A stretch of DNA of 64,000 nucleotides from Macrostomum lignano (taxonomy: Eukaryota). The stretch is from contig NIVC01000013.1 in the NCBI GenBank assembly GCA_002269645.1, positions 558,001 to 622,000 on the forward strand, read 5' to 3'. This document shows positions 11,467-51,300 of this stretch, piece by piece. Position numbers and translations under genes: made by a program. A model generated the notes under the pieces. It was not told where the DNA came from. It did not search any database and saw nothing but the letters and a program-made list of their open reading frames with translations. Each line of letters opens with the position of its first letter. The first letter of the stretch is position 1.

Positions 11467-11469
11467 TTG

Positions 11470-22400: not shown

Positions 22401-25400
22401 ATTGATAACACAGGATCTCTAGATTGATAACACAGGATCTCTAGATTGATAACACAGGATCTCTAGATTGATAACACAGGATCTCCAAATTGATAACACA
22501 GGATCTCTAGATTGATAACACAGGATCTCTAGATTGATAACACAGGATCTCTAGATTGATAACACAGGATCTCCAAATTGATAACACAGGATCTCTAGAT
22601 TGATAACACAGGGTCTCCAAATTGATAACACAGGATCTCTAGATTGATAACACAGGATCTCCAAATTGATAACACAGGATCTCTAGATTGATAACACAGG
22701 ATCTCCAAATTGATAACACAGGATCTCCAGATTGATAACACAGGATCTCTAGATTGATAACACAGGATCTCTAGATTGATAACACAGGATCTCCAAATTG
22801 ATAACACAGGATCTCCAAATTGATAACACAGGATCTCTAGATTGATAACACAGGATCTCCAAATTGATAACACAGGATCTCTAGATTGATAACACAGGAT
22901 CTCTAGATTGATAACACAGGATCTCTAGATTGATAACACAGGATCTCCAAATTGATAACACAGGATCTCTAGATTGATAACACAGGATCTCTAGATTGAT
23001 AACACAGGATCTCTAGATTGATAACACAGGATCTCCAAATTGATAACACAGGGTCTCCAAATTGATAACACAGGATCTCTAGATTGATAACACAGGATCT
23101 CCAAATTGATAACACAGGATCTCTAGATTGATAACACAGGATCTCTAGATTGATAACACAGGATCTCTAGATTGATAACACAGGATCTCTAGATTGATAA
23201 CACAGGGTCTCCAAATTGATAACACAGGATCTCTAGATTGATAACACAGGATCTCTAGATTGATAACACAGGATCTCTAGATTGATAACACAGGATCTCT
23301 AGATTGATAACACAGGATCTCCAAATTGATAACACAGGATCTCTAGATTGATAACACAGGATCTCTAGATTGATAACACAGGATCTCTAGATTGATAACA
23401 CAGGATCTCCAAATTGATAACACAGGATCTCTAGATTGATAACACAGGATCTCTAGATTGATAACACAGGATCTCTAGATTGATAACACAGGATCTCCAA
23501 ATTGATAACACAGGGTCTCCAAATTGATAACACAGGATCTCTAGATTGATAACACAGGATCTCCAAATTGATAACACAGGATCTCTAGATTGATAACACA
23601 GGATCTCTAGATTGATAACACAGGATCTCCAAATTGATAACACAGGATCTCTAGATTGATAACACAGGATCTCCAAATTGATAACACAGGATCTCCAGAT
23701 TGATAACACAGGATCTCTAGATTGATAACACAGGATCTCTAGATTGATAACACAGGATCTCTAGATTATAACACAGGATCTCTAGATTGATAACACAGGA
23801 TCTCTAGATTGATAACACAGGATCTCTAGATTGATAACACAGGATCTCTAGATTGATAACACAGGATCTCCAAATTGATAACACAGGATCTCTAGATTGA
23901 TAACACAGGATCTCTAGATTGATAACACAGGATCTCTAGATTGATAACACAGGATCTCTAGATTGATAACACAGGATCTCTAGATTAATAACACAGGATC
24001 TCTAGATTGATAACACAGGATCTCCAAATTGATAACACAGGATCTCTAGATTGATAACACAGGATCTCTAGATTGATAACACAGGATCTCTAGATTGATA
24101 ACACAGGATCTCCAAATTGATAACACAGGATCTCCAAATTGATAACACAGGATCTCCAAATTGATAACACAGGATCTCTAGATTGATAACACAGGATCTC
24201 TAGATTGATAACACAGGATCTCTAGATTGATAACACAGGATCTCCAAATTGATAACACAGGATCTCTAGATTGATAACACAGGATCTCTAGATTGATAAC
24301 ACAGGATCTCTAGATTGATAACACAGGATCTCTAGATTGATAACACAGGATCTCCAAATTGATAACACAGGATCTCTAGATTGATAACACAGGATCTCTA
24401 GATTGATAACACAGGATCTCCAAATTGATAACACAGGATCTCTAGATTGATAACACAGGATCTCCAAATTGATAACACAGGATCTCCAGATTGATAACAC
24501 AGGATCTCTAGATTGATAACACAGGATCTCTAGATTGATAACACAGGATCTCTAGATTGATAACACAGGATCTCTAGATTGATAACACAGGATCTCCAAA
24601 TTGATAACACAGGATCTCCAAATTGATAACACAGGATCTCCAAATTGATAACACAGGATCTCTAGATTGATAACACAGGATCTCCAAATTGATAACACAG
24701 GATCTCTAGATTGATAACACAGGATCTCCAAATTGATAACACAGGATCTCCAGATTGATAACACAGGATCTCTAGATTAATAACACAGGATCTCTAGATT
24801 GATAACACAGGATCTCTAGATTGATAACACAGGATCTCCAAATTGATAACACAGGATCTCCAAATTGATAACACAGGATCTCTAGATTAATAACACAGGA
24901 TCTCTAGATTGATAACACAGGGTCTCCAAATTGATAACACAGGGCCTCTAGATTGATAACACAGGATCTCTAGATTGATAACACAGGATCTCTAGATTGA
25001 TAACACAGGGTCTCCAAATTGATAACACAGGGCCTCTAGATTGATAACACAGGATCTCTAGATTGATAACACAGGATCTCCAAATTGATAACACAGGATC
25101 TCTAGATTGATAACACAGGATCTCTAGATTGATAACACAGGATCTCTAGATTGATAACACAGGATCTCCAAATTGATAACACAGGATCTCTAGATTGATA
25201 ACACAGGATCTCTAGATTGATAACACAGGATCTCTAGATTGATAACACAGGATCTCTAGATTGATAACACAGGATCTCTAGATTATAACACAGGATCTCT
25301 AGATTGATAACACAGGATCTCCAAATTGATAACACAGGATCTCTAGATTGATAACACAGGATCTCTAGATTGATAACACAGGATCTCTAGATTGATAACA

Positions 25401-27647
25401 CAGGATCTCCAAATTGATAACACAGGATCTCCAAATTGATAACACAGGATCTCTAGATTGATAACACAGGATCTCCAAATTGATAACACAGGATCTCCAA
25501 ATTGATAACACAGGATCTCCAAATTGATAACACAGGATCTCTAGATTGATAACACAGGATCTCTAGATTAATAACACAGGATCTCCAAATTGATAACACA
25601 GGATCTCCAAATTGATAACACAGGATCTCTAGATTGATAACACAGGATCTCTAGATTGATAACACAGGATCTCTAGATTGATAACACAGGATCTCTAGAT
25701 TGATAACACAGGATCTCTAGATTGATAACACAGGATCTCTAGATTGATAACACAGGATCTCTAGATTGATAACACAGGATCTCTAGATTGATAACACAGG
25801 ATCTCTAGATTGATAACACAGGATCTCCAAATTGATAACACAGGATCTCCAAATTGATAACACAGGATCTCCAAATTGATAACACAGGATCTCTAGATTG
25901 ATAACACAGGATCTCTAGATTGATAACACAGGATCTCTAGATTGATAACACAGGATCTCCAAATTGATAACACAGGATCTCTAGATTGATAACACAGGAT
26001 CTCCAAATTGATAACACAGGATCTCTAGATTGATAACACAGGATCTCCAAATTGATAACACAGGATCTCCAAATTGATAACACAGGATCTCTAGATTGAT
26101 AACACAGGGTCTCCAAATTGATAACACAGGATCTCTAGATTGATAACACAGGATCTCTAGATTGATAACACAGGATCTCTAGATTGATAACACAGGATCT
26201 CTAGATTGATAACACAGGATCTCTAGATTGATAACACAGGATCTCTAGATTGATAACACAGGATCTCTAGATTGATAACACAGGATCTCTAGATTGATAA
26301 CACAGGATCTCTAGATTAATAACACAGGATCTCTAGATTGATAACACAGGATCTCCAAATTGATAACACAGGATCTCTAGATTGATAACACAGGATCTCT
26401 AGATTGATAACACAGGATCTCCAAATTGATAACACAGGATCTCTAGATTATAACACAGGATCTCTAGATTGATAACACAGGATCTCCAAATTGATAACAC
26501 AGGATCTCTAGATTGATAACACAGGATCTCTAGATTGATAACACAGGATCTCTAGATTGATAACACAGGATCTCTAGATTGATAACACAGGATCTCCAAA
26601 TTGATAACACAGGATCTCTAGATTGATAACACAGGATCTCCAAATTGATAACACAGGATCTCCAAATTGATAACACAGGATCTCTAGATTGATAACACAG
26701 GATCTCCAAATTGATAACACAGGATCTCTAGATTGATAACACAGGATCTCTAGATTGATAACACAGGATCTCTAGATTGATAACAGGGTCTCTAGATTGA
26801 TAACAGGGTCTCTAGATTGATAACACAGGATCTCTAGATTGATAACAGGGTCTCTAAATTGATAACACAGGATCTCTAGATTAATAACAGGATCTTTAGA
26901 TTGATAACACAGGATCTCTAGATTGATAACAGGATCTCTAGAATGATAACAGGATCTCTAGATTGATAACACAGGATCTCTAGATTAATAACAGGGTCTC
27001 CAGAAAGGATTTGAAACAACTAGAAGTTCAGTTGTAAAGAAGGAAGAGTAGAAAGCTTTTTACTTACCTCTGGTACAAGACGATTCAATATCATTTCCAT
27101 ATCAGTTCTAAAAGTTAGAAAATATAAACAAATCAGGCACTATCCAACACCACAAACCAAAAGTACACAATATACTCACTTAACGGATGCATCCCAGGAC
27201 TAAAATTGGAATGATGAGAAATGTACTTTAATAAACATTGACGTGTTATAGATTTTCAGTTTTCAGGAACCTTAGGCCACCAAAAGTGCATTTGGCCCCT
27301 ATCTTTAAGCGTAAAAAAGATTGATTGACTTACTTCGTTCAAGCACAAACTTGCAGAGGTATGCTGAACTGAAAGTACAGCGTGAAAGTTGATAATGACA
27401 GGTCATGAAATGCTTGAAATACTTTAGTATATTGAAATAGTTTCAATATTATGAGAGCGATCAACTCACGCAACAAGTTAACGGTTCCAATTTTGATTTT
27501 AGCAATCTCTGGTACAGACTTGATTAGATCCGTGATGTAGTGACAGCCTCGAGATTTGCCTGACACCTTCAGCACCGTCTGGTACCAGACTGTAGCACCG
27601 CTGACTGCGGCGGAGGCTTTCGATGAGTTTGACAGAAATAGTGCCGT
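19419..27647 (-). CDS. yjbQ: YjbQ/UPF0047 (secondary thiamine-phosphate synthase family) protein
   Basis: Exons ~27647-27470, 27368-27334, 27199-27180 (20 nt), 27107-27068, 20229-20070 and 19462-19419 splice in phase to ...VWYQTVLKVSGKSRGCHYITD...NLLLQHTSASLCLNESWDASVKTDMEMILNRLVPEDQRYQHSCEGPDDMPAHAKAAILGCSLTIPISNGQMCLGTWQGIWLCEHRNHKSSRNIVVTVNGVEK*. HTSASL-NE, H-EG-DD-PAH and GTWQ motifs present. Start not resolved (no ATG nearby). Confidence 0.85.
19555..19965. repeat. 23-bp minisatellite (AATCCCAAAACTCAAAGATCCCC)n in the last yjbQ intron
   Basis: Direct reading; same family as 10910-11215. Confidence 0.93.
20258..27005. repeat. 6.7-kb 22-bp satellite (GGATCTC[TAG/CAA]ATTGATAACACA)n inside a yjbQ intron
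   Basis: About 300 monomers of two main variants; 20-bp variants at both edges. Confidence 0.98.
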
Positions 27648-29732: not shown

Positions 29733-32700
29733 TCACAGATCTGGTTGACTCGAATCGGTTGGCCGCAGAGCCACAACGGTGCCAGCGGCGACTGTAACGC
29801 CCCGGTCTCTGAGCATGAACTTGCCTAACTCTCTGCTATTAGTATAGACGTCGAGGCATAGCGGCCGGTCCAATTGTAGTTCAACTTCGGCGCAGCAATT
29901 GCTGAGTATGTAGCGCGGATGCCGGCGCTCCAGCTGACCAGTGGATTTGTTAATCTGGGCTAGTAGGCGGATTATCGTGACCGGGACTGACACGGCTTGC
30001 TGGTGGAATATTGCTTGGTAGCCCTGGATAGAAAATAGTCGGTAAAGTAATTATAAACTATAAATCACCGCTTTGTAGAAATATGTGATTTCCCGACCTT
30101 CCCGGAGGGTAGTGGAGTTGAAAACGAATCTACTATACTAAATCAAAATCAAGCAGAAACATTTGATTTCTCAGCCGCTCCGGAGGGGGGGTTGGAATCT
30201 AGTCCACTATACTAAATCTTATCAATTCAGAAATACGTGATTTGCCAACCTCCCCGGAGGGGGGTTGGAATCTAGTCCACTATACTAAATCTTATCAATT
30301 CAGAAATACGTGATTTGCCAACCTCCCCGGAGGGGGGTTGGAATCTAGTCCACTATACTAAATCTTATCAATGCAGAAATACGTGATTTGCCAACCTCCC
30401 CGGAGGGGGGTTGGAATCTAGTCCACTATACTAAATCTTATCAATTCAGAAATACGTGATTTGCCAACCTCCCCGGAGGGGGGTTGGAATCTAGTCCACT
30501 ATACTAAATCTTATCAATTCAGAAATACGTGATTTGCCAACCTCCCCGGAGGGGGGTTGGAATCTAGTCCAGAATACTAAAATATGAAGAGAATACATTT
30601 TTCTTCTGTGAAAATCATCAAAATTGTTATTAAAAGTCATCAAAATTGTCTTTAATAAGATTCTACTATTTATCGACTTACTTTATGTCTGAAGCTTTTG
30701 TTAACCATGTATATTAAAACCTGTAAACATGTATATTAGTATAATGTATATTATATTAAGATAAGAAAACAAAGAAAAATTCACCTTAGTAACCGGCTGG
30801 CTAACATTTATCAGAAGCAGTTTAGCTCTCAGCCGATTAGTACACGGACAGGGCATGGTCACGGAGGACAGCACCGACCCGGGCCCGAAGTGAGCCGGAT
30901 CGACGCCACCCCGGAAACGCTGATAGTGCCGGAATCGCCGGCAAAGATGGCCGGACCAGCAGCCGCGGAAGCATCCTGACCGCTAGATGTCACAGCTTTA
31001 ACTGTTATCCGTTGATTAGCAGGCAATAACAATAATTTATGACCTGGAGCCGCGTAGCCCGACAGTGCGTTGCCGAAGCAGGTCACCGCGCCGGAGCCGC
31101 CGGTGCCGCGACCGCCGGTGGATACCTCCGAGATGTAGAAGCGTAGCGGCTTGTCCACCGATCGGGGTGGCGGAGTTAAACGATCGATCAGGTCAACCAG
31201 TGTTGGTCCTGATGCGTACCTTTTGGGGTGGCGATTAGAAATTATGGGAAGTATTAATCATATTTGTTAATCATATCAACATAGCTTGTTCAGATTATTA
31301 TTTGTCTCCAGTGCAATATGTGATTTGACTAGAAACCAGACTACTTACTGAATCTACTGGCTCAACTTACCAAATAGATTATTCAATGAGTATATACTAA
31401 CTGAACTGAATCTATAAACCGGATTAACGAATACAAAACCCTGGCTACCGAATCTACAAATCAGGCTACCGAAACTACCAAGCGACTCACCAGGGACACA
31501 GTTCAGCTGACAAGGGCTTATTGAGATTGGCCCCCTCCAGGCCAGACACGGGACAATAGCTAACGCAGTCCGGCTTAAACCCAACGGATTTCAAATAGAC
31601 GCCAAGTTTGTCGCGAATTTCAGCGAATCGAGTCTCGGACCATTTGGCCGTGTCCATCTTGTTGATGGCCACCACCAGCTGGCCGATGCCCAGACCCCTG
31701 GCTAGCAGGGCATGCTCTCGGGTCTGGCCGCCCTGGTCGAAGCCGCTTTCAAATTCGCCTCTGGTGGCGTTGATCACCAGCAGGGCGGCGTCCGCGGCCA
31801 TGGCGCCGCTGATCATGTTCGGTATGAAGTCCTTGTGACCGGGGCAATCTAGAAGATTCACTAGCCGGTGAGGCGTGCTCAGCTGACTACGAGCGACGTC
31901 CATTGTGACGCCGCGTTGGCGCTCCTCTTCGCTTTCGTCTAGGACCCAGGCGAATTGGAAGCTGGGCTTGCCGGCTTTGCGGCACTCCTTTGTAATTGGC
32001 AAGGGGAAGGCGATACTAAGAGTGAGGATAATAGGGATCCAAGTGGCTCGCCCAGCAACTTGAGGATCTGGAAGGCTGGCCCAACAACTGACACTCTCTG
32101 GGAGGCTGGCCCAGCAACTGACACTCTAGGGGGGGGAGCAGCTGAGGATCTGGGAGGCTGACCCAACAACTGACACTCTGGGAGGCTGGCCCAGCAGCTG
32201 AGGATCTGGGAGGCTGACCCAACAACTGACACTCTGGGAGGCTGGCCCAGCAGCTGAGGATCTGGGAGGCTGACCCAACAACTGACACTCTAGGGGGGGG
32301 GGGGGGCAGCAGCTGAGGATCTGGGAGGCTGACCCAACAACTGACACTCTGGGAGGCTGGCCCAGCAACTGAGGATCTGGGAGGCTGGCCCAGCAGCTGA
32401 GGATCTGGGAGGCTGGCCCAGCAACTGAGGATCTGGAAGGCTGACCCAACAACTGACACTCTGGGAGGCTGGCCCAGCAGCTGAGGATCTGGGAGGCTGA
32501 CCCAACAACTGACACTCTGGGAGGCTGGCCCAGCAACTGACACTCTGGGAGGCTGGCCCAGCAGCTGAGGATCTGGGAGGCTGACCCAACAACTGAGGAT
32601 CTGGGAGGCTGGCCCAGCAGCTGAGGATCTGGGAGGCTGGCCCAGCAACTGAGGATCTGGGAGGCTGGCCCAGCAACTGAGGATCTGGGAGGCTGGCCCA

Positions 32701-33597
32701 GCAGCTGAGGATCTGGGAGGCGGGCCCAGCAACTGAGGATCTGGGAGGCTGGCCCAGCAACTGAAGATCTAGGAGGCTGGCCCAGCAACTGACGATCTGG
32801 GAGGCTGGCCCAGCAACTGAGGATCTGGTAGACTGACCCAGCAACTGAGGATCTGGGAGTTCAGGAAGTTTCAGCCAGGAACTCAAGACAGAAATTCTAA
32901 CCACAAACTTTACATATCAAGCTTTAATACAACAGCTAGCAGTAAGTACGAGTACAATTGTCAGCCTCACCTGTTCATACCGGTGAATAACTTTCTGACT
33001 AACTGCGCCCAGCAGATACAACAAGTGGCCAATTAGCGTACTTTTACCGGCGTCCACGTGACCAATAATCACTAAATTAATCATGGCCCGGTCGCCCAAG
33101 CCAGCGCAATACCGTTTGTAGGCCTCCGTCGCCGAAGCTTCGGTCGAATCGCCGCCAGCAGAGTCAGGATCGGCGCCGTTTTTTCTAGGCGGCGCCGGGC
33201 TGGCGCTACGGGAGTTGCTGGCGCTACTAGCGGCCTGCTGCTGCTGCTGCTGTTTAGTCGAGAGTAGCCGAGGCGAAGGCGAAGGGACGGATGGCGAGAC
33301 GGCTACGGCGCCGGCAAAACCAACTTTGACGCTGTGCGCCGGTCCAGCCGTAGCCACGTGAAGGCGCGCCATTTGCGGCGCCGGCGCCGATTGGGGTGGC
33401 TCCTCTTTGACGTCAGGCAGAGGAGGCTGGGTGATCCGGCCGCCCGTGTCCTTGTCCCGGACAAACAGGTAAGCGCTGGCGGTGGCCGGCGACACGCCGA
33501 AGGCCGGCTCGTCTTCGAACGAGTGGCCGAACGATTCGTCTACGTCGTAGTCTTCGTCGTCGTTTAAAGCGATGTTTTTCACTCGACGACGGGACAT
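29733..33597 (-). CDS. HBS1L: HBS1-like translational GTPase (eEF1A/eRF3 family), 4 exons
   Basis: Exons 33597-32971, 31987-31491, 31219-30785, 30023-29733. HBS1-type N-terminus [17 protein letters not shown]; G1 GHVDAGKST; [18 protein letters not shown]; DCPGH; NKMD; C-terminal [17 protein letters not shown]. One -1 frameshift at the C run 30909-30912. Confidence 0.88.
30090..30575. repeat. 73-bp tandem repeat (about 6 copies) containing an imperfect inverted repeat
   Basis: TTTGCCAACC recurs at 30241 and 30314; each unit contains CCAACCTCCCCGGAGGGGGGTTGG. Confidence 0.92.
32050..32860. repeat. 28-bp minisatellite (GAGGATCTGGGAGGCTGGCCCAGCAACT)n in HBS1L intron 1
   Basis: Direct reading; related to 48620-49256. 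Confidence 0.93.
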
Positions 33598-34272: not shown

Positions 34273-34499
34273 AGGTGCGCAGGATTAAAAACACTACAAA
34301 GAGAACAATAACCAGAAATAAGATAAATATGCGCAACAGGCGCATTGGTTCCTGGAGTACTGAATCAAAGGTGGCATGACCCAGCCTAATAATACATTTT
34401 ATTTGTCATTCACAATCGGTCGCTTTTGGGAGAAACAATGATCAGGGGTTTTCAAAGCTACTTATTATCGAGCCGTGCCAGAAAAGGTGGGATCATCGG

Positions 34500-34776: not shown

Positions 34777-37700
34777 TTAAGCTGCCTTCTTGGCCGACTT
34801 CCGTCTCAGCTTAGCGGGAGGCGGCGATTCAGATTCCTCGCTGCTGGCCACATCTTCCGGTTCGTCCACTTTGGCCGAGGCACTCGCAGCTTCCGGCTGT
34901 TCAGTTGGTTCGACATCACCATCCGACGAAGGCGGTAGCCAAACAATGCAACGGGTTGGCCGACAATTCGATTGCAAATCCAGACGGTGCAACAGGTTCA
35001 GAGTGCCGGCCTTCTGGTTCAGACTGGCCAGCACTATGCAGTTGGCGTCTCTGCAATTTAGTTATTATTATATAGATTTAGATTAGTAGCATTGATAATT
35101 CGATGATTTTCCTTGTATTGCTACTGTCAGTAGTTCAGTTTGGATATAATTAAGTTAAACTTTTTATACTTTTAAAATACAGTATAAAACAGAGATTTCT
35201 TTGCTTTTTAGTTGCAAAACTGCAAAGCCTAAATTTCAATTTTCACTACATTGAAATGGTTCGTCTTTTTAGGTAGGTATTTATCTATGTGGATTTAAAA
35301 TTAGATTGAAAACCAATAGTCATTAAAGAAAAACAGATGAAAAGTTACTTTTTAGCTTTTGAAATCCTAATTAGTTTAGTTTAAACTAAAACAGCTGCCT
35401 TTAGTTCCTAAAAACCTAAACTAAAACAGCTACTTTTTTAGTTCCTAAAAACCTAAACTAAAACAGCTACTTCTAGTCCCTAGTTTTTAATTTTTAGGTA
35501 CTACAAAACCAAAACCGAAACCCGCAGCTAGCTTTGCCAGATATGCAAAAAAAACAATTTAAAAACTTCTTCCCCATCATTAAACCTACCTGCCAGTACA
35601 CACGGCAGCAAGCATTTGCCGGTTTTTCTGACCCTGACCAGCTGCGTCCAACCAAGCGGTCGCGTCCTTGACTCGACCGACCGCATCCTTGAGCAGGTTG
35701 CCGTCAGCAATGCATTCTCCGCTAGTAGCTCTCAAGCAAGTCAGCACACCGTCTGAGCGACCAACAAGCATCGCGGTTTTACTCTTAAACGAAGGCCAAT
35801 CATCTGATGATAAAAATGAATCGTCGCTAATCCTAGCACAGGTGACGGCAACTCCAACAGAGCTGCTGATTTTATTGATTTCCCAGCTGTGTTGGCACTC
35901 GCAGGTGTCGATGTTGTGCCAGTCAATTGAGTCGCTGTACACCAGAGCGAACACAGTTGAACTGCACCATAGAATCGAGTCCGGCTGACGCTTCAGCTTC
36001 AGGGCGTAGCTAAGGGGGTTGAGCATGATATTGTACAGTGAGCTGCTGTTGAAAGGCTATGACAAGTTGCTGTGGCACTGAGCTTGTCAGGGGCTGCTAC
36101 CCCCTCCTCTACCCCCAGGGTTTCTCAATTATGGCTGCTACCCCCACCTCTACCCCCAGGGTTCCTCAATTGTGGCTGCTACCCCCTCCTCTACCCCCAG
36201 GGTTTCTCAATTATGGCTGCTACCCCCACCTCTACCCCCAGGGTTTCTCAATTATGGCTGCTAGCCCCACCTCTACCCCCAGGGTTCCTCAATTGTGGCT
36301 CCTACCCCCTCCTCTACCCCCAGGGGTACCTCAATTGTGGCTGCTACCCCCTCCTCTACCCCCAGGGTTCCTCAATTATGGCTGCTACTCCTTTCTTTAC
36401 CCCCAGGGTTTCTCAATTATGGCTGCTACTCCCTTCTTTACCCCCAGGGTTTCTCAATTATGGCTGCTACTCCCTCCTCTACCCCCAGGGTTCCTCAATT
36501 ATGGCTGCTACTCCTTTCTTTACCCCCAGGGTTTCTTAATTATGGCTGCTACCCCTCCTCTACCCCCAGGGTTCCTCAATTATGGCTGCTACTCCCTCCT
36601 CTACCCCCAGGGTTCCTCAATTATGGCTGCTACTCCTTTCTTTACCCCCAGGGTTTCTTAATTATGGCTGCTACCCCTCCTCTACCCCCAGGGTTCCTCA
36701 ATTATGGCTGCTACTCCTTTCTTTACCCCCAGGGTTTCTCAATTATGGCTGCTACCCCTCCTCTACCCCCAGGGTTCCTCAATTATGGCTGCTACCCCTC
36801 CTCTACCCCCAGGGTTACTCAATTATGGCTGCTACCCCTCCTCTACCCCCAGGGTTTCTCAATTATGGCTGCTACCCCTCCTCTACCCCCAGGGTTCCTC
36901 AATTATGGCTGCTACTCCTTTCTTTACCCCCAGGGTTTCTCAATTATGGCTGCTACCCCTCCTCTACCCCCAGGGTTTCTCAATTATGGCTGCTACCCCT
37001 CCTCTACCCCCAGGGTTTCTCAATTATGACTGCTACTTCCTCCTCTACCCCAGGGTTTCTCAATTATGACTGCTACTTCCTCCTCTACCCCAGGGTTTCT
37101 CAATTATGACTGCTACTTCCTCCTCTACCCCAGGGTTTCTCAATTAAATGATTGAGTGATTTTAATAAACGTGTCATACTCTATTGTTTTACATTTCCTA
37201 TATAAACCTAAATGTAATAAAAGTGTTTTCTATAGAATGAAGAACACATATGCCAGATAAAACGAATGAATTTTAACCCTGGGTCATCAAGCTTGCGATA
37301 AACAGGAGAGCCAAGAAGATCAGAGCCCATTAGAACAGTTACAAGCTGTGTAAACATAGATAGAAAACCCATGTTATAGAATATAGCTAGCTACTATCAG
37401 AAATGCACCTGTTTATAAATTGCAGCATCAAATTAAGATGAAACAAACTGCAAGTTCCAGTGCTAATAAAAATGTTCACTTATAATATACAGCAAACCAA
37501 ACGTCAGACCCTAGCGTCAATTTACTTTAAACTATAAAAATCTATTTTCTCACTCAACTTATCTACTAGATTCTTAGAACAGGTCAATTACGATTCTTAG
37601 AACAGGTAAAAGGCGATTCTTAGAACAGATCAAGGACGATTCTTAGAACAGGTAAAAGGCGATTCTTAGAACAGGTCAATGACGATTCTTAGAACAGGTA

Positions 37701-38760
37701 AAAGGCGATTCTTAGAACAGGTCAATGACGATTCTTAGAACAGGTAAAAGGCGATTCTTAGAACAGATCAAGGACGATTCTTAGAACAGGTAAAAGGCGA
37801 TTCTTAGAACAGGTCAATGACGATTCTTAGAACAGGTAAAAGGCGATTCTTAGAACAGGTCAATGACGATTCTTAGAACAGGTAAAAGGCGATTCTTAGA
37901 ACAGATCAAGGACGATTCTTAGAACAGGTCAAGGACGATTCTTAGAACAGGTAAAAGGCGATTCTTAGAACAGGTCAAGGGCGATTCTTAGAACAGGTCA
38001 AGGGCGATTCTAAGAACAGGTCAAGGGCGATTCTTAGAACAGGTCAAGGGCGATTATTAGAACAGGTCAAAGGCGATTCTTAGAACAGGTCAAGGGCGAT
38101 TCTTAGAACAGGTCAAGGGCGATTCTTAGAACAGGTCAAGGGCGATTCTTAGAACAGGTCAAGGGCGATTCTTAGAACAGGTCAAGGGCGATTCTTAGAA
38201 CAGGTCAACAGAATTTCAACAGAATAACAAACCAAACAAGCCGGCACTCACGCCTGCCTTCCTCGTATGAGATTCCAGGCTCGCAGGGTGCAATCGTCCC
38301 CAATAGACAGAGCCAGCCGACCCGACTGGTGCACTCCCAGAGATCTGACGCCCTCCTTATGCCGACGCATTGTCCGAAGGCACTCCCAGCCGCGGCAAGA
38401 CCAAATCGCTAAGCTCTTATCGCTGCTGCAGCTTAGCAGATGAGAATCGCCAAAGAATGCCAGATCCGTAACTCCGCCTTCGTGCTGCATCAACTGGCCC
38501 AGCTTGCGCAGATTAGACAGATTGTACAGACTAATCTGTTCGTCTCGAGAGCCGCTGGCTAGCCGGCCATTGGGAGACACAGCTAAACAAGCTATCGCCT
38601 TCAGGTGCGCCGACGCTTCGGTGAATAGAGGCCGAAGTGTACGCGAAAGCGACGAAGATTGATCAGACGGAGTGTCTGCTGACAGATTGCTGACTGAGTA
38701 ACCGGCTAGGCCACCCTCTAGGGTGCCGATCACCAGGACTGGGGCGGACTTGTCACGTGA
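34777..38760 (-). CDS. PAK1IP1: PAK1IP1/Mak11-like WD40 ribosome-biogenesis protein; initiator ATG not found
   Basis: Exons 38760-38252, 36009-35590 and 35050-34777 join in phase. VLVIGTLEG; AHLKAIACLAVSPNGRLASGSRDEQISLYNL; HEGGVTDLAF; LLSCSSDKSLAIW; HKEGVRSLGVHQSGRLALSIGDDCTLRAWNLIRGRQA|YALKLK; basic C-terminal tail KLRRKSAKKAA. Confidence 0.78.
36092..37146. repeat. ~41-bp minisatellite (CCCCAGGGTTTCTCAATTATGGCTGCTACCCCTCCTCTAC)n
   Basis: Direct reading; intron 38251-36010. Confidence 0.94.
37565..38207. repeat. 23-bp minisatellite (GATTCTTAGAACAGGTCAAGGGC)n
   Basis: Direct reading. Confidence 0.94.
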
Positions 38761-38837
38761 CTGCAATTTTAGTAGCAATAAAATTAGTTTAATGGGAGAT
38801 AATGCACTGCTAGATAAGGAGATTGACTTAGGAACAA

Positions 38838-41800
38838 TTTTTTGAGAACACTATTCCATTCTGAGACTGTTTTTGAGAACACTATTCCATTCTGAGACTG
38901 TTTTTGAGAACACTATTCCATTCTGAGACAGTTTTTGAGAACACTACTCCATTCTGAGACTGTTTTTGAGAACACTATTCCATTCTGAGACTGTTTTTGA
39001 GAACACTATTCCATTCTGAGACTGTTTTTGAGAACACTATTCCATTCTGAGACAGTTTTTGAGAACACTACTCCATTCTGAGACTGTTTTTGAGAACACT
39101 ATGCCATTCTGAGACTGTTTTTGAGAACACTATTCCATTCTGAGACTGTTTTTGAGAACACTATGCCATTCTGAGACTGTTTTTGAGAACACTATTCTAT
39201 TCTGAGACTGTTTTTGAGAACACTACTCCATTCTGAGACTGTTTTTGAGAACACTACTCCATTCTGAGACTGTTTTTGAGAACACTATTCCATTCTGAGA
39301 CTGTTTTTGAGAACACTATTCCATTCTGAGACAGTTTTTGAGAACACTACTCCATTCTGAGACTGTTTTTGAGAACACTATGCCATTCTGAGACTGTTTT
39401 TGAGAACACTATTCCATTCTGAGACTGTTTTTGAGAACACTATGCCATTCTGAGACTGTTTTTGAGAACACTATTCTATTCTGAGACTGTTTTTGAGAAC
39501 ACTACTCCATTCTGAGACTGTTTTTGAGAACACTATGCCATTCTGAGACTGTTTTTGAGAACACTATTCCATTCTGAGACTGTTTTTGAGAACACTATTC
39601 CATTTTGAGACTGTTTTTGAGAACACTATTCCATTCTGAGACTGTTTTTGAGAACACTATGCCATTCTGAGACTGTTGTTGAGAACACTACTCCATTCTG
39701 ATACTGTTTTTGAGAACACTATGCCATTCTGAGACTGTTTTTGAGAACACTATGCCATTCTGAGACTGTTTTTGAGAACACTATGCCATTCTGAGACTGT
39801 TTTTGAGAACACTATTCCATTCTGAGACTGTTTTTGAGAACACTATTCCATTCTGAGACTGTTTTTGAGAACACTATTCCATTCTGAGACTGTTTTTGAG
39901 AACACTATTACATTTTGAGACTGTTTTTGAGAACACTATTCCATTCTGAGACAGTTTTTGAGAACACTATTCTATTCTGAGACTGTTTTTGAGAACACTA
40001 TTCCATTCTGAGACTGTTTTTGAGAACACTACTCCATTCTGAGACTGTTTTTGAGAACACTATGCCATTCTGAGACTGTTTTTGAGAACACTATTCCATT
40101 CTGAGACTGTTTTTGAGAACACTATGCCATTCTGAGACTGTTTTTGAGAACACTATTCCATTCTGAGACTGTTTTTGAGAACACTATGCCATTCTGAGAC
40201 TGTTTTTGAGAACACTACTCCATTCTGAGACTGTTTTTGAGAACACTACTCCATTCTGAGACTGTTTTTGAGAACACTATGCCATTCTGAGACTGTTTTT
40301 GAGAACACTATGCCATTCTGAGACCGTTTTTGAGAACACTATTTCATTCTGAGAACACTATTCCATTCTGAGACAGTTTTTGAGAACACTATTCTATTCT
40401 GAGACTGTTTTTGAGAACACTATTCCATTCTGAGACTGTTTTTGAGAACACTACTCCATTCTGAGACTGTTTTTGAGAACACTACTCCATTCTGAGACTG
40501 TTTTTGAGAACACTATGCCATTCTGAGACTGTTTTTGAGAACACTATGCCATTCTGAGACCGTTTTTGAGAACACTATTTCATTCTGAGAACACTATTCC
40601 ATTCTGAGACAGTTTTTGAGAACACTATTCTATTCTGAGACTGTTTTTGAGAACACTATTCCATTCTGAGACTGTTTTTGAGAACACTATGCCATTCTGA
40701 GACTGTTTTTGAGAACACTATGCCATTCTGAGACTGTTTTTGAGAACACTATGCCATTCTGAGACCGTTTTTGAGAACACTATGCCATTCTGAGACTGTT
40801 TTTGAGAACACTATTCTATTCTGAGACTGTTTTTGAGAACACTATTCCATTCTGAGACTGTTTTTGAGAACACTACTCCATTCTGAGACTGTTTTTGAGA
40901 ACACTATGCCATTCTGAGACTGTTTTTGAGAACACTATACCATTCTGAGACTGTTTTTGAGAACACTATGCCATTCTGAGACTGTTTTTGAGAACACTAT
41001 TCCATTCTGAGACTGTTTTTGAGAACACTATGCCATTCTGAGACTGTTGTTGAGAACACTACTCCATTCTGATACTGTTTTTGAGAACACTATGCCATTC
41101 TGAGACTGTTTTTGAGAACACTATGCCATTCTGAGACTGTTTTTGAGAACACTATGCCATTCTGAGACTGTTTTTGAGAACACTATTCCATTCTGAGACT
41201 GTTTTTGAGAACACTATTCCATTCTGAGACTGTTTTTGAGAACACTATTCCATTCTGAGACTGTTTTTGAGAACACTATTCCATTTTGAGACTGTTTTTG
41301 AGAACACTATTCCATTCTGAGACAGTTTTTGAGAACACTATTCTATTCTGAGACTGTTTTTGAGAACACTATTCCATTCTGAGACTGTTTTTTGAGAACA
41401 CTACTCCATTCTGAGACTGTTTTTGAGAACACTATGCCATTCTGAGACTGTTTTTGAGAACACTATGCCATTCTGAGACTGTTTTTGAGAACACTACTCC
41501 ATTCTGAGACTGTTTTTGAGAACACTATTCCATTCTGAGACTGTTTTTGAGAACACTATGCCATTCTGAGACTGTTTTTGAGAACACTATGCCATTCTGA
41601 GACCGTTTTTGAGAACACTATTTCATTCTGAGAACACTATTCCATTCTGAGACAGTTTTTGAGAACACTATTCTATTCTGAGACTGTTTTTGAGAACACT
41701 ATTCCATTCTGAGACTGTTTTTGAGAACACTACTCCATTCTGAGACTGTTTTTGAGAACACTACTCCATTCTGAGACTGTTTTTGAGAACACTATGCCAT

Positions 41801-42251
41801 TCTGAGACTGTTTTTGAGAACACTATGCCATTCTGAGACCGTTTTTGAGAACACTATTTCATTCTGAGAACACTATTCCATTCTGAGACAGTTTTTGAGA
41901 ACACTATTCTATTCTGAGACTGTTTTTGAGAACACTATTCCATTGTGAGACTGTTTTTGAGAACACTATGCCATTCTGAGACTGTTTTTGAGAACACTAT
42001 TCCATTCTGAGACTGTTTTTGAGAACACTATGCCATTCTGAGACTGTTTTTGAGAACACTATGCCATTCTGAGACCGTTTTTGAGAACACTATTTCATTC
42101 TGAGAACACTATTCCATTCTGAGACAGTTTTTGAGAACACTATTCTATTCTGAGACTGTTTTTGAGAACACTATTCCATTCTGAGACTGTTTTTGAGAAC
42201 ACTACTCCATTCTGAGACTGTTTTTGAGAACACTATGCCATTCTGAGACTC
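38838..42251. repeat. 3.4-kb 31-bp satellite (GAGAACACTATTCCATTCTGAGACTGTTTTT)n
   Basis: About 110 monomers directly upstream of the PAK1IP1-like acceptor. Confidence 0.97.
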
Positions 42252-42957
42252 AAGTGAATAAATAAACAGTAAAATAATAACAAACGCAGAACATGTTAAT
42301 GAATGCCAAAACAGCTAGTAACTAAGGGATCATTATGCATATTTTGTATTTGTATAAATATTATTGGTAGAATTAATGAAAAAACTTGATTGCACCTCAA
42401 TAAGCTACTACAGACTACTAATAATGTCTCAATATCAATAGAATACCAATAGAATAAGTGTAATATATAATAAACATAAGGCTATAAATTCTAAGCAAAA
42501 AAACTCGAATGATTCCAATCGAATGTTTGGCGTAAAGAATACCAAAAAGATTGTTTTATGAAAATATATAAAATAGTCGATATATTGTTGAAAAAAAACT
42601 TGTCTGCAAAAAATCTAGAGGCACTACTTGTAACCTAATGGAGTATATAATGAAGATTGGTAATGCGTACTGATCAAAGAGAACTACAATACCTATTGCA
42701 CTCAATATCATAAAATTTATTGTAAACTGGAGATTCGTTGTTGCATATAAAAATGGGATTGAAAACGTCTAGCAATGGCTAAAACTGCCAATAAATCACC
42801 ATAAAATAGATGCGAGCCTATTCAATAATAGTATTGATATATATATGTGTATATAGTATGCACTGAATTGCTATGGCTATAAATATTATGTTGGATATAC
42901 GATGGGCAGCCTTCACCAGACAGATGATATGACAAATTGAATAGACAAACTGGAATA

Positions 42958-43606
<649 letters not shown>

Positions 43607-43692: not shown

Positions 43693-45666
43693 CTAAGCCG
43701 GCAGCACTTCAGTCTTGAAGTCCTTAGTAACCAGGATGAGCAGGCTGCCGGACTGCGGCACGTCGGCGGCCCCGCTGACCCAGTTGGCAAGCAGGTCGGC
43801 CACAAAGCTCAGCGGAGTCCACTCGCTGAGGCCGGCCTCGCCCATGGCCCGCCTGTTAGCCGGGGTGTCCAGCGTGACGGGCAGGATAGCCAGGGCGCGG
43901 GCGCCACTGGGTAGGCCCGAGTTTTTCTCGGCAAGTGAGCGAACCTGAGGTAAAAATAGGCGAGGTTTGATACAAAATGTGAATAAGAACACATTGAATC
44001 AATCGGAAAGATGAGATAAAGGTTGCGGATTGAAGAGAAAAAAATCCGATCAAGAGAAGAAAATGAAGGGATTAAATGAAGGTCATGAAGCGATCCGATG
44101 AAAGGAATGAAGGGATCAGATGAATGAATGGAATGAAGGGATCAGATGAAGGGAATGAAGGGATCAGATGAAGGGAATGAAGGGATCAGATGAAGGGAAT
44201 GAAGGGATCAGATGAAGGGAATGAAGGGATCAGATGAAGGGAATGAAGGGATCAGATGAATGAATGGAATGAAGGGATCAGATGAATGGAATTAAGGGAT
44301 CAGGTGAAGGGAATTAAGGGATCAGATGAATGGAATTAAGGGATCAGGTGAAGGGAATTAAGGGATCAGGTGAAGGTAATTAAGGGATCAGGTGAAGGTA
44401 ATTAAGGGATCAGGTGAAGGGAATTAAGGGATCAGATGAATGGAATTAAGGGATCAGGTGAAGGGAATGAAGGGATCAGATGAATGGAATTAAGGGATCA
44501 GATGAATGGAATTAAGGGATCAGATGAATGGAATTAAGGGATCAGATGAATGGAATTAAGGGATCAGATGAATGAAATTAAGAGATCAGGTGAAGGGAAT
44601 GAAGGGATCAGGTGAAGAGAATTAAGGGATCAGGTGAATGAAGGGAATGAAGGGATCAGATGAAGGGAATGAAGGGATCAGGTGAAGGGAATGAAGGGAT
44701 CAGATGAAGGGAATGAAGGGATCAGATGAAGGGAATGAAGGGATCAGATGAATGAATGGAATGAAGGGATCAGGTGAAGGGAATGAAGGAATCAGATGAA
44801 TGAATGGATCAAATGAAGGGAATGAAGGGATCAGATGAATGAATGGAATGAAGGGATCAGATGAAGGGAATGAAGGGATCAGATGAAGGGAATGAAGGGA
44901 TCAGATGAAGGGAATGAAGGGATCAGATGAATGAATGGAATGAAGGGATCAGATGAAGGGAATGAAGGGATCAGATGAAGGGAATGAAGGGATCAGATGA
45001 AGGGAATGAAGGGATCAGATGAATGAATGGAATGAAGGGATCAGATGAAGGGAATTAAGGGATCGAATGGCAGGAAAGGAATAAAGGAATCTGATGAAAG
45101 GTCATAAGGGATAAAGGGCACAAGTGGAATGAAGGGACTGGACTGAAATGCTAAAAATGCAGTTGGCACACAGACAGACGAGGGCCGCTCACCAGATGAT
45201 GCACGGCAGCCTTGGCCATGCCGTAGCCGATCATGCCGGGCGTCGGTCCCAACGCCGGCTGGGCGCCGGTGAGCAGCAGCAGAGAGTCCTTGGAGTCCAG
45301 CAGGTGCTTGGCGGCCAGAGAAGCGGCAATAACGCTAGTCCAGACCGACTGCTTCAGCACCAAGTCACAGTTGGCGACGAAATTGTCGCTGCCGGCGTCT
45401 CCGCCGGCCCAGCCGCCGGCAACGCAGATCACGGCGTCGAGTTTAGCGCCGTCCAACACTTTGGCAACGTCGGCGACTACGGCGGCGTGTTGATCGGTTA
45501 GACTGCCGCCAGAAGGCGACACGGCTACGCTAGCATCGGCGTCGGGATTGTCAGCGCCGATGTCTACGCTGCACACCCAGCAGCCCAGCTGTTTGAATTT
45601 CATTACGCAGGCTGAGCCAAGGGCGCCGCGACCGCCGTACACGAGGATTCGTTTGGTTGAGGACAT
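43693..45666 (-). CDS. QDPR: Dihydropteridine reductase (SDR family), 2 exons
   Basis: Exon 45666-45193 (MSSTKRILVYGGRGALG...DAVICVAGGWAGG...QSVWTS...LTGAQPAL...GMIGYGMAKAAVHHL) spliced at phase 0 to 43944-43693 (VRSLAEKNSGLP...LPVTLDTPANRRAM...WTPL). Confidence 0.92.
44095..45065. repeat. 22-bp minisatellite (GAAGGGAATGAAGGGATCAGAT)n in the QDPR intron
   Basis: Direct reading. Confidence 0.94.
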
Positions 45667-48333: not shown

Positions 48334-51300
48334 TTAAAGCTTGTAGAATGTCTCCTCAACGTCATTGGCGGAGACTAATTGCTTTGATCGAACCACCAGT
48401 TCGGGATTTGCCAGAGCATCAGCCGGTGAGCAGTCGGCTAAGCCGGGATCAGCCACAGTTGTCAGGGTAGGAGCGCCAGAGCCGTGCTGGCGCCTGGCCT
48501 GCTGGCTGTGCAGGTAGCGAGCCGTACGCCTGGCAGGCATGCAGCTGTAGGCAGCCTGGGTGTCTTCCTCTGATAGGCTGCGGCGTGGGGTGGGGACTCT
48601 TGCGTGAGGCTCAAGCTACTCTAACTGAGGATCTGAGAGGCTGGCCCAGCGACTGAGGATCTCGGAAGCAACTGAGGATCTGGGAGGGTCACCAAGCAAC
48701 TGAGGATTTGGAGGGTCGCCAAGCAACTGAGGATCTGGGAGGGTTGCCAAGCAACTGAGGATCTGGAGGGTTGCCAAGCAACTGAGGATCTGGGAGGGTT
48801 GCCAAGCAACTGAGGATCTGGGAGGGTCGCCAAGCAACTGAGGATCTGGAGGGTTGCCAAGCAACTGAGGATCTGGGAGGGTTGCCAAGCAACTGAGGAT
48901 CTGGAGGGTTGCCAAGCAACTGAGGATCTGGAGGGTTGCCAAGCAACTGAGGATCTGGAGGGTTGCCAAGCAACTGAGGATCTGGAGGGTTGCCAAGCAA
49001 CTGAGGATCTGGAGGGTCGCCAAGCAACTGAGGATCTGGGAGGGTTGCCAAGCAACTGAGGATCTGGAGGGTTGCCAAGCAACTGAGGATCTGGAGGGTT
49101 GCCAAGCAACTGAGGATCTGGAGGGTTGCCAAGCAACTGAGGATCTGGGAGGCTGGCCCAGCAACTGAGGATCTGGAGGGTTGCCAAGCAACTGAGGATC
49201 TGGGAGGCTGGCCCAGCAACTGAGGATCTGGGAGGCTGGCCAAGCAACTGAGGACCCCATCAAAGCTCTCATTAGTTTAACATTAGATAAAACAAGAAAT
49301 CAATGTTGAAAGTAAAACCGACCAGCCCTACCTGCTCTCATTCTCCAATTTTTCAACGTTAGTCTTTAACTGCATAAATTTGAGATCAAATTTTCTCAAA
49401 AATTCGTTAGAATCCATCTCGCTAAAATCTCTGTCGCTAGCAAAAGTTTTCGACCTGGTGACGGATGAAGAAGAAGCCGATTTCATCGAGTGGTTTGGCT
49501 TAGCCGAACTGTTAGCAGCCGCAGCAGGCTGAGCAGGTGCCTCATCATCGGCCACAAACTGCTCAAAGCTGACTTCCGCCTCAACCACAGTCGAGGGCGG
49601 AGTCGGGTTCCTAGAGGAAGTGCCCGAGGCGGAACCGCTGCGACTGCCAGCTGCCGGCCCAGAAAGCTCGGGCACTTTGATGCTGGACTTCAACTGTAGA
49701 CCATCGTTGCTCCACAAGCCGTTGAGTCTTTTCAGCTCTTCCACCTGAGTGGAAAATTAAGGTCATTGAGTTAGGCAGGCAACTAACAGCCAGAAAGGAG
49801 ACAAATTAGGAAGTAAAATTCAGGGGCTGGCCATAGAGGCACACAGATATGCAAGAAAGTATAGATGTAATTGCGATTAATGTTCTGTACCAAAGGTCGA
49901 CAAACGTTTTTATAAGGGCCAGATAAAGAATATACTTCATGGTCGCTGGTCAGATGAGAGTGGAAAGGAGAGAGAATGGATGAGAAATGAGAGAGAGGAG
50001 AGAGGGGGGAGAGGTGAACCTTTGTGTAGGCCAGAGTTTCAAGTAGGCCAGATTACTATTGTGAAGTTTTAAAAGACCCAAGGGCCAAATAAAGAGGGGT
50101 TTTGTAGGCCTGGCCACATATAGCCTGCAGGCCAGACTTTGCCAACCCTTGTTCTATACAAATCATTTTGAATGTTAAGCTATTTAACATTGATAATGTA
50201 TAAACAGAAAGGATATTTCCATTGCTAAAACTAAATACAAAAGTATAAAAATATAACTATAATTTAAACTTCTTACAATTTGAAACTTAAAGTTTTATGA
50301 ACCATATCTTATTAATGTTTTATATATTATAATAATAATGCCTCAACTTTAACTTTTGTTTGGCATTATAAATTTGGATCCCAGATGCGAATTCTAGCTA
50401 GATACTATTTATTTCAATATACAATATCCATATTTTTAATTCATATATTATCCAAAGTAATAAACTTTAAAAAATTGGGATTGCAAGAATTCTATCAGCT
50501 ATCAAATTTGAAGCACCTATCTATATAAGCCTAGAGCCTATATAAGCCTTAGTGCATTAAAAATATTGAATATATGTTCTAAAATTACTCATTTTATTTT
50601 ATGTTTCCTAGAAAGCATTATTTCAAATCTGCACTAAAAAATTATTTGTTTAAATGCTATGAACCACAAAAATATTTTTGTGACCAATCTTAGTTATAAA
50701 CAGTAAAGAATTTTTGTATAAATAGAAGCCTAGAACAGGCCAAAAAATAATTATCTACAAGCTAGCAAATTCACTTAGCAAACTAATATAATTGTTCCAT
50801 ATTAAAATTGCTAATTGCAGTATTCAAGAGACTTATTCATTTCTTTAGAGTATCAAGTCCTATATTGGGAGTTTTGAAAACAATTGAAAGCAAGTATCGC
50901 CTAAGAGCAATAATTACTATAGAGTAGCAAAATTGCCTTACCTTTAAGGCAGGAGAAACTGCCTCAGGGCAGTGAAATTGCTTAGAAGCTGTAACCCTTT
51001 GATCCTGGGAATATCCAAGGCTGAGAGAAAACTACTGTAGGAGCCATACATGCCTAACACCCATCCAAACCAGATGGGTAAAATGGCCACTGGCCAAGGT
51101 AAGTTGTAAAATCAAAAATGTGAAAAATGAAAAATTTGGAGAAGAAAGGAGAAAAGGAAAAGGAAAAAGGAAGAAGAGAGAAAAGGAAAGAGGAGAGAGA
51201 AAAAGAAAGAAGAAAAGAGAAAAAGGCAAGAAAAGTCATATAAAAAATAAAAATTAGGTTGTAATTGGGAGAAACTAAGTTGCAAATCTAGACAAAACTA

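What the first reader, a model, noticed from the sequence alone, without database searches (positions are those of the whole stretch)
38700..38840. PAK1IP1-like gene may get its start codon from the spliced leader
The first recognisable coding exon begins in phase 0 directly after a strong acceptor with a branch-like motif (CTACTAAAATTGCAG|TCA CGT GAC AAG). About 7 codons later comes the conserved N-terminal strand VLVIGTLEG. There is no ATG between the satellite and the acceptor, and the first in-frame Met is about 85 codons downstream, inside the WD repeats. Upstream lie a 3.4-kb satellite, AT-rich DNA and the QDPR 3' end. Flatworm SLs end in a conserved AUG that can act as the initiator (shown in Schistosoma). 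SL-AUG joined here gives MSRDKSAPVLVIGT..., a normal-length N-terminus. The QDPR acceptor is also in frame with its ATG. Species and SL use are inferred.
Basis: partly seen in the sequence, partly recalled or inferred. Interest (0 to 1): 0.7.

Follow-up and report, generated by a model that had tools for sequence, protein, structure and literature searches.

The report
WD40 gene lacking its own start codon
A ribosome-assembly gene (PAK1IP1-like) begins right at a splice acceptor with no start codon of its own, most likely borrowing the AUG that ends a flatworm-type spliced leader; that mechanism has been known since 2006, and neither the species nor the transcript could be checked here.

Summary
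On the minus strand a three-exon, 400-codon WD40 gene (38760-34777) starts in phase 0 right after ...gctactaaaattgcag|TCA CGT GAC AAG. It aligns end to end with human PAK1IP1 (E 1e-39), and its conserved first strand (LVIGTLEG) starts 8 codons after the acceptor. There is no ATG in the 78 nt back to the 3.4-kb satellite. All 102 satellite ATGs hit a stop within two codons. The first in-frame ATG is codon 91, inside the propeller.

Every reported flatworm spliced leader (SL) ends in AUG, and more than 40 Schistosoma cDNAs need that AUG. The acceptor fits the Macrostomum trans-splice motif YTNCAG. Gene spacing fits a repeat-inflated operon, QDPR-PAK1IP1-HBS1L.

Three gaps remain. The species could not be identified; codon usage and minisatellite load are only Macrostomum-like. 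No SL gene lies in the window. No transcript was reachable.

One cis rival exists: ATG|GTGATT at 42802. Its donor is weak, and it lies upstream of the only AATAAA after QDPR.

I put SL-donated AUG at about 0.5 and a cis ATG mini-exon at about 0.3. If true, this is a new member of a known kind, of low to moderate interest.

The parts
38761..38775 (-). 3' splice site: branch-like CTACTAA (38775-38769) and ...aaattgcag, with AG at 38762-38761. Proposed SL trans-splice acceptor.
   Evidence: The 9-mer AAATTGCAG occurs only here and at the exon-3 acceptor on this strand. It fits the M. lignano trans-acceptor motif [T/C]TNCAG. GC is 32% upstream and 60% downstream.
38252..38760 (-). Exon 1 of the PAK1IP1-like WD40 gene. 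It starts in phase 0 with TCA (SRDKSAPVLVIGTLEG...) and ends GGC|GTGAGT. It has no in-frame ATG before codon 91 (38490-38488).
   Evidence: Pfam WD40 E 2.7e-21.
35590..36009 (-). Exon 2 (acceptor cccttag|, donor CAG|GTAGGT).
   Evidence: Colinear with human PAK1IP1.
34777..35050 (-). Exon 3 with the TAA stop (34779-34777). Acceptor ...gctactaat...aactaaattgcag|.
38761..38838 (-). 78-nt AT-rich stretch between satellite and acceptor. It has no ATG in any frame and is open in the exon frame. Read here as the end of the outron.
38839..42250 (.). 31-bp-unit satellite (about 110 copies). On the sense strand each unit carries ATG GAA/GCA TAG. That gives 102 ATGs, each closed by a stop within two codons.
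42794..42802 (-). Rival cis mini-exon end: ATG (42802-42800) followed directly by the donor-like GTGATT.
   Evidence: Donor log-odds is 2.06, against 2.8, 8.3 and 6.8 for the three known donors. An equal or better candidate appears in 26% of shuffles. The 163 nt upstream are ATG-free (P 0.04). The region has no special RNA fold.
42716..42721 (-). The only AATAAA/ATTAAA on the sense strand between the QDPR stop and the satellite. Likely QDPR poly(A) signal; it lies downstream of the rival ATG|GT.
43693..45666 (-). QDPR (dihydropteridine reductase) gene, the upstream neighbour on the same strand. Two exons (45666-45193, 43944-43693), with its own ATG.
33595..33597 (-). ATG of the HBS1L-like GTPase gene ([18 protein letters not shown]...), the downstream neighbour on the same strand.
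   Evidence: GTP_EFTU-type hits.
34398..34403 (-). The only AATAAA after the WD gene's stop. Likely its poly(A) signal.

Best explanation
The gene encodes a PAK1IP1/Mak11-like seven-bladed WD40 protein.

Proposed mechanism:
- Its first genomic exon starts at a 3' splice site (AG at 38762-38761) and has no start codon.
- The pre-mRNA is either a read-through from QDPR or starts in the AT-rich spacer.
- Its 5' part, including the 3.4-kb satellite with 102 tiny ATG-stop units, is removed as an outron.
- A flatworm-type spliced leader ending in ...AUG is joined to TCA at 38760.
- Translation then starts at the SL's AUG and gives MSRDKSAPVLVIGTLEG....

Shown here: the anatomy, the homology and the lack of any usable ATG. 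Inferred: that the organism has an AUG-terminated SL and that this site is trans-spliced.
For: - Exon 1 starts in phase 0, 8 codons before the conserved first beta-strand. The two other frames close after 1 and 9 codons.
- End-to-end colinear match to human PAK1IP1 (E 1e-39; residues 10-393 against 3-352). The human sequence was confirmed at 100% identity in the database, next to clusters named PAK1IP1.
- All 19 mammalian orthologues begin ME-LVAGCYE, so no further coding exon is needed.
- In the AF2 model (pTM 0.74) residues 8-13 and 18-22 are strands of the propeller. Starting at Met91 would delete more than a blade.
- No ATG lies in the 78 nt upstream, and the satellite ATGs are all dead ends.
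- No consensus GT[G/A]AG donor in phase 0 follows any open ATG in the 4.9 kb up to QDPR.
- The acceptor is a real-looking 3' splice site, twin of the exon-3 acceptor, and fits YTNCAG.
- All reported flatworm SLs end in ATG. In S. mansoni 28% of trans-spliced mRNAs are in frame and more than 40 cDNAs need the SL AUG.
- The genome style is Macrostomum-like. Tandem repeats cover 45% of the window. Published M. lignano promoter fragments carry 21- and 28-bp minisatellites. The top codon matches M. lignano-optimised codons for 16 of 18 amino acids, including Pro=CCG.
- Repeat-adjusted same-strand spacing is 879 bp and 397 bp, under the 1-kb operon criterion used for M. lignano.
- In M. lignano conserved genes and 85% of neoblast-specific genes are trans-spliced.
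Against: - The species is unidentified. No SL RNA gene is in the window.
- No close relative or transcript is in any searchable collection. Trans-splicing at this site is therefore not observed.
- A cis candidate exists: ATG|GTGATT at 42802. Its donor score is close to the weakest known donor. An equal or better one arises by chance in only 26% of shuffles, and it has an ATG-free 163-nt leader.
- Phase 0 at the acceptor is needed by the cis model as well, so it does not discriminate.
- The YTNCAG motif also fits the cis acceptor of exon 3.
Confidence: 0.5

Rival explanations
1. A cis-spliced 5' mini-exon supplies the ATG. The only concrete candidate ends exactly in ATG at 42802-42800 (donor GTGATT). 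Its 4,039-nt first intron would hold the whole satellite and end at the same acceptor.
For: - ATG|GTGATT is in the required phase. Its donor log-odds (2.06) is not far below the weakest known donor (2.79).
- An equal or better candidate appears in only 26% of shuffled AT-rich cores.
- The 163 nt upstream hold no ATG (P about 0.04), and TATATATAT lies about 40 nt upstream.
- Every confirmed intron in the window holds a minisatellite, so a satellite-filled intron would be in style.
- The acceptor looks just like the cis acceptor of exon 3.
- This model needs no assumption about the species.
Against: - The donor lacks the +5 G that all three known donors have.
- The site lies upstream of the only AATAAA after the QDPR stop, so it is probably inside the QDPR 3' UTR.
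- An exon that ends exactly after its ATG is rare.
- All other ATG...|GT paths in the 4.9 kb have very poor donors or would add a hydrophobic extension unknown in the family.
Confidence: 0.3
2. This is a 5'-truncated or recently disabled copy (or an assembly error in the satellite), and an intact paralogue lies elsewhere. The missing start codon would then simply be damage.
For: - A 3.4-kb satellite sits exactly where a 5' exon or promoter would be.
- Macrostomum-type genomes are highly duplicated.
- No transcript evidence was obtainable.
Against: - 400 codons over three exons are intact, with canonical GT-AG sites and conserved family residues.
- The AF2 model is a complete propeller.
- The exon begins at a well-formed acceptor rather than at a ragged break.
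Confidence: 0.1
3. The message is unspliced at its 5' end. Translation starts at a non-AUG codon (in-frame TTG at 38778 or 38766) or at the internal Met91.
For: - The frame is open for 28 codons upstream and holds two in-frame TTGs.
- Non-AUG starts are reported in SL-using taxa.
Against: - Starting at Met91 removes the N-terminal strands and the first blade.
- An out-of-frame ATG at 38570 would be met first.
- The upstream codons are 32% GC, unlike the 60% GC coding sequence.
- Any longer leader would carry satellite uATGs.
Confidence: 0.05

Closest known systems
SL-AUG-dependent mRNAs of flatworms (Cheng, Cohen, Ndegwa and Davis 2006, J Biol Chem 281:733; called 'slORFs' in PMC9851317)
   Same: A trans-splice-type acceptor sits directly at the start of the conserved ORF in phase 0. 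No in-frame AUG of the gene's own is available. Adding ...AUG gives an N-terminus of normal length.
   Different: There the SL junction was seen on cDNAs and the AUG was tested functionally. Here neither the SL nor the junction was seen, and the species is unknown.
Macrostomum lignano SL trans-splicing and repeat-inflated operons (PMC8629364, PMC5730564)
   Same: The acceptor motif YTNCAG fits. Neighbours lie on the same strand, and their spacing falls below 1 kb once tandem repeats are subtracted. The gene is a conserved housekeeping gene. The DNA is minisatellite-rich with GC-rich codons.
   Different: The window shares no diagnostic sequence with published M. lignano fragments. The predicted proteins are not in the collection. 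Identity with that species or genus is therefore not shown.
PAK1IP1 (human) / Mak11 (yeast), WD40 factor of 60S ribosome biogenesis
   Same: The match is colinear over the full length. The first beta-strand sits at the very N-terminus, the fold is a seven-bladed propeller, and the C-terminal tail is charged.
   Different: Identity is only 29-31%. The C-terminal half is divergent, with two insertions. Reciprocal-best-hit orthology was not tested.
Ordinary genes whose first coding exon ends just after the ATG
   Same: The start codon would be separated from the rest of the ORF by a long first intron that ends at a normal acceptor.
   Different: That needs a real donor after an ATG. The only candidate here is weak and probably lies in the neighbour's 3' UTR.

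Membership tests
SL-AUG-initiated flatworm mRNA | The organism makes an SL RNA whose leader ends in AUG. | not testable with these tools
   No SL RNA gene is in the window (Rfam; M. lignano SL scan; ATG|GTRAG+Sm scan). The species was not identifiable.
SL-AUG-initiated flatworm mRNA | [quoted passage not shown] | tested here: inconclusive
   The acceptor is present and well formed. No consensus donor lies in 4.9 kb, but one weak in-phase ATG|GTGATT exists.
SL-AUG-initiated flatworm mRNA | An AUG joined at the acceptor is in frame with the main ORF, with no stop in between. | tested here: met
   ATG + TCA CGT GAC AAG... reads through 400 codons.
SL-AUG-initiated flatworm mRNA | The gene has no AUG of its own that could give a complete protein. 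| tested here: met
   No ATG lies in 38761-38838. The satellite ATGs close within two codons. The first in-frame ATG is codon 91, inside the propeller.
SL-AUG-initiated flatworm mRNA | SL-bearing transcripts end at this junction. | not testable with these tools
   No transcript of this species is in the collections.
PAK1IP1/Mak11 WD40 family | Full-length colinear similarity, including the N-terminal strand directly after the Met. | tested here: met
   BLASTP E 1e-39, residues 10-393 against 3-352. In the alignment with 19 orthologues, L9, G12, E15, L18 and G20 are invariant.
PAK1IP1/Mak11 WD40 family | Seven-bladed WD40 propeller. | tested here: met
   Pfam WD40. AF2 model with pTM 0.74, all-beta. 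Foldseek matches to seven-bladed propellers over 300-335 columns.
PAK1IP1/Mak11 WD40 family | Reciprocal best hit (orthology rather than generic WD40 similarity). | not tested
   The exhaustive search was swamped by giant WD40 proteins. Human PAK1IP1 is not in the PDB copy.
Flatworm (M. lignano-type) operon | Same-strand neighbours with repeat-adjusted spacing under 1 kb. | tested here: met
   From the QDPR stop to the WD acceptor is 4,932 bp; minus 4,053 bp of repeats this is 879 bp. From the WD stop to the HBS1L ATG is 1,180 bp; minus 783 bp this is 397 bp.
Flatworm (M. lignano-type) operon | The downstream genes are SL trans-spliced from one precursor. | not testable with these tools
   No RNA data were available.

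The most novel reading that the evidence does not exclude
An essential 60S-biogenesis factor in a free-living, minisatellite-laden (macrostomid-like) flatworm has no start codon of its own. It depends wholly on the AUG of the spliced leader. It sits as the middle gene of a QDPR-PAK1IP1-HBS1L operon whose spacers have been inflated several-fold by satellites full of decoy ATGs, which trans-splicing removes.
Probability: 0.3. Interest if true: 0.35.

Novelty: new member of a known kind. Interest (0 to 1): 0.25.

Why it matters
If true, it is a clean example of a conserved, probably essential gene that depends on the SL's AUG. That has a practical consequence. Annotation pipelines that trim the leader before calling ORFs, as was done for M. 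lignano, will report such genes as 5'-partial or start them at an internal Met. The locus would also show trans-splicing protecting a gene from a satellite carrying about 100 upstream ATGs. It does not change what is known about the mechanism.

Tried and rejected
- Protein search with exon 1 gave no hits.
- The exhaustive representative search with the full protein was swamped by multi-repeat WD40 giants and was useless for orthologues or N-termini.
- PDB sequence searches with the N-terminal or C-terminal halves gave only generic WD40 hits or noise. Human PAK1IP1 is not in the PDB copy.
- The HBS1L GTPase exon, used as a species probe, gave a best hit of only 66% identity with no taxonomic signal. 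The best hit's contig is not syntenic.
- A profile search with human plus window protein returned only mammals in the visible list.
- Exact look-ups of ten product variants (with and without Met, from the internal Met, single-exon ORFs, QDPR, HBS1L) found none in the collection.
- Two metagenome scans, one with a 24-mer of exon 1 and one with the protein, found nothing.
- Rfam, tRNA, M. lignano SL and generic ATG|GTRAG+Sm scans of the window found no SL RNA gene.
- K-mer sharing with published M. lignano promoter fragments was not significant at k of 14 or more.
- I considered that the ATG|GT at 42802 could be an SL-RNA-like gene. I rejected this because the fold z-score is -0.52.
- Pfam on other ORFs confirmed only the molybdopterin-binding (xanthine dehydrogenase / aldehyde oxidase-type) gene. 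My impression of transposase-like ORFs was not confirmed.
Full report
**What is there**

The feature is on the minus strand. Read 5'->3', the sequence is ...cattaaactaattttattgctactaaaattgcag|TCA CGT GAC AAG TCC GCC CCA GTC CTG GTG ATC GGC ACC CTA GAG GGT.... The AG is at 38762-38761 and the first exon base is 38760.

I built a three-exon model:
- Exon 1: 38760-38252, donor GGC|GTGAGT.
- Exon 2: 36009-35590, acceptor cccttag|, donor CAG|GTAGGT.
- Exon 3: 35050-34777, acceptor taaattgcag|, TAA stop.

The model gives 400 codons without a Met. Exon 1 alone scores as WD40 (Pfam E 2.7e-21).

**Is it PAK1IP1-like?**

BLASTP against human PAK1IP1 gives E 1e-39 at 29% identity. The match is colinear, residues 10-393 against 3-352. 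It was then confirmed: a database cluster is 100% identical over 100% of it, and neighbouring clusters are named p21-activated protein kinase-interacting protein 1.

In an alignment with 19 mammalian orthologues, all start ME-LVAGCYEQVLFGF. The window protein reads SRDKSAPV-LVIGTLEGGLAGY. Positions L9, G12, E15, L18 and G20 are invariant. Exon 1 therefore already covers the family's whole N-terminus, and only a Met is missing.

An AlphaFold model (pTM 0.74) puts residues 8-13 and 18-22 in beta-strands of an all-beta propeller. Foldseek matches seven-bladed WD40 propellers. Reciprocal-best-hit orthology could not be tested, because the exhaustive search was swamped by giant WD40 proteins.

**Where could a start codon be?**

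- The exon frame is open for 28 codons upstream, back to a TAG in the satellite, and holds no ATG.
- No ATG in any frame lies in 38761-38838.
- The 31-bp satellite (38839-42250) carries 102 sense-strand ATGs. Every one is closed by a stop after one or two codons.
- The other two frames of exon 1 close after 1 and 9 codons, so any upstream exon must join in phase 0.
- In an unspliced message the first ATG would be the out-of-frame one at 38570 (MAG-stop). The first in-frame ATG is codon 91 (38490), inside the repeats.
Otherwise its description is accurate.

**The acceptor**

It is not pyrimidine-rich. However, AAATTGCAG occurs only twice on this strand in 64 kb: here, and at the homology-supported acceptor of exon 3, which also has GCTACTAA upstream. 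GC rises from 32% to 60% across the site. It is a credible 3' splice site, but nothing in it says cis or trans.

**The SL explanation**

All reported flatworm SLs end in AUG (PMC12582326; PMC7653826). In S. mansoni the SL AUG is in frame in 28% of trans-spliced mRNAs, and more than 40 cDNAs need it (PMC9851317 citing Cheng et al. 2006).

For M. lignano:
- The SL is CGGTCTCTTACTGCGAAGACTCAATTTATTGCATG, the trans-acceptor motif is [T/C]TNCAG and the cis donor motif is GT[G/A]AG (PMC8629364). TTGCAG fits the acceptor motif.
- Conserved genes, and 85% of neoblast-specific genes, are trans-spliced there.
- Operons are recognised by a repeat-adjusted spacing below 1 kb, because repeats inflate the spacers.

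In the window, QDPR, the WD gene and an HBS1L-like gene lie head to tail on the minus strand. From the QDPR stop to the acceptor is 4,932 bp, of which 4,053 bp are tandem repeats. From the WD stop to the HBS1L ATG is 1,180 bp, of which 783 bp are repeats. In all three genes a satellite ends 78-104 nt before the first coding exon.

**Is it a flatworm?**

This I could not establish. The evidence is only circumstantial:
- Tandem repeats cover 45% of the window, and almost every intron and spacer has its own 20-45-bp minisatellite.
- M. lignano is reported to have 15% simple and tandem repeats. Two of five published M. lignano promoter fragments open with 21- and 28-bp minisatellites.
- In 1,011 codons GC3 is 0.66. 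The commonest codon equals the M. lignano-optimised codon for 16 of 18 amino acids, including the less usual Pro=CCG.

Against identity with that species:
- K-mer sharing is not significant.
- None of ten predicted products is in the 15-billion-protein collection.
- The best HBS1L match is 66%.
- Both metagenome scans were empty.
- No SL RNA gene lies in the window.

**The main rival**

I listed every sense-strand ATG between QDPR and the acceptor, and every in-phase GT reachable from it without a stop. Only one is worth considering: ATG|GTGATT at 42802-42800.

In its favour:
- Its donor log-odds (2.06) is below the three known donors (2.8, 8.3, 6.8), though not by much against the weakest.
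- An equal or better candidate appears in 26% of Markov-shuffled cores.
- The 163 nt upstream of it hold no ATG (P about 0.04).
- A TATATATAT run lies about 40 nt upstream.

Against it:
- It lacks the +5 G.
- An exon ending exactly after its ATG is rare.
- It lies upstream of the only AATAAA/ATTAAA between the QDPR stop and the satellite (42721-42716). It is therefore probably inside the QDPR 3' UTR.
- The region has no SL-RNA-like fold (z -0.52).

**Weighing**

If the organism is a flatworm, I put the SL model ahead of the cis model by roughly 2-3 to 1. I put 'flatworm' at about 0.7. Overall:

| Explanation | Probability |
|---|---|
| SL-donated AUG | about 0.5 |
| Cis ATG mini-exon | about 0.3 |
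| Truncated copy or assembly artefact | about 0.1 |
| Non-AUG or internal start | about 0.05 |

**Verdict**

The side remark about QDPR is weak; the only in-frame AG is ttcaag| 15 nt upstream, and the cagcag| site is out of frame. The mechanism itself has been known since 2006, so even if true this is a new member of a known kind. Its main value is for annotation.

Noticed in passing
window 1-64000: Tandem repeats cover 45% of the window. Almost every intron and intergenic spacer holds its own array of about 0.3-1.3 kb with a 20-45-bp unit. There is also one 6.7-kb array of a 22-bp unit at 20258-26993.
   Followed up: partly
12145-13442 and 18825-19110; 10912-11175 and 19561-20014; 32045-32859 and 48648-49254: Some minisatellite families recur at separate loci. 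A 21-bp unit TCTATCCGCTGTGTCTCACCC recurs, and so does a 23-bp unit CCAAAACTCAAAGATCCCCAATC. A GCAACTGAGGATCTGG-containing unit occurs in an HBS1L intron and again near 48.6-49.3 kb. The arrays are therefore not all private.
   Followed up: no
38839-42250 (minus strand): Each 31-bp satellite unit carries ATG GAA TAG or ATG GCA TAG on the sense strand. That gives 102 two- or three-codon mini-ORFs in a row, directly upstream of a gene that has no ATG.
   Followed up: yes
38749-38748 (minus strand): A second in-frame AG (gacaag|TCC) lies four codons into exon 1. An AUG joined there would give MSAPVLVIGT..., so two acceptors could serve the same frame.
   Followed up: no
45771, 38839 and 33683 (satellite ends) against 45666, 38760 and 33597: In three consecutive same-strand genes (QDPR, the WD gene, HBS1L-like) a satellite array ends 104, 78 and 85 nt before the first coding base. 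The spacer architecture is thus repeated.
   Followed up: partly
1-11600 (+ strand): C-terminal part of a xanthine dehydrogenase / aldehyde oxidase-type gene (Pfam MoCoBD_1 E 9e-27, MoCoBD_2 E 2e-29). Minisatellites sit between its exons.
   Followed up: partly
54608-54399 and 49744-49328 (minus strand): Two ORFs read like the two halves of a LysM-domain gene (MADEKD...HKVRPSDTLVSLAIKYETT, then MEELKRLNGLWSNDGLQLKSSIKVP), with its own ATG and an intron of about 4.6 kb. Pfam did not score either half on its own.
   Followed up: partly
42966-43606 and 1236-1809: Two long tetranucleotide arrays: (AGAC)n of 641 bp, probably inside the QDPR 3' UTR, and (ACTC)n of 574 bp.
   Followed up: no
61743-62441, 18396-18854, 15711-16334, 56452-56814: Longer non-repeat ORFs that looked transposon-derived by eye (transposase-like or reverse-transcriptase-like) gave no Pfam hit at E <= 0.001. 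Their nature is open.
   Followed up: partly
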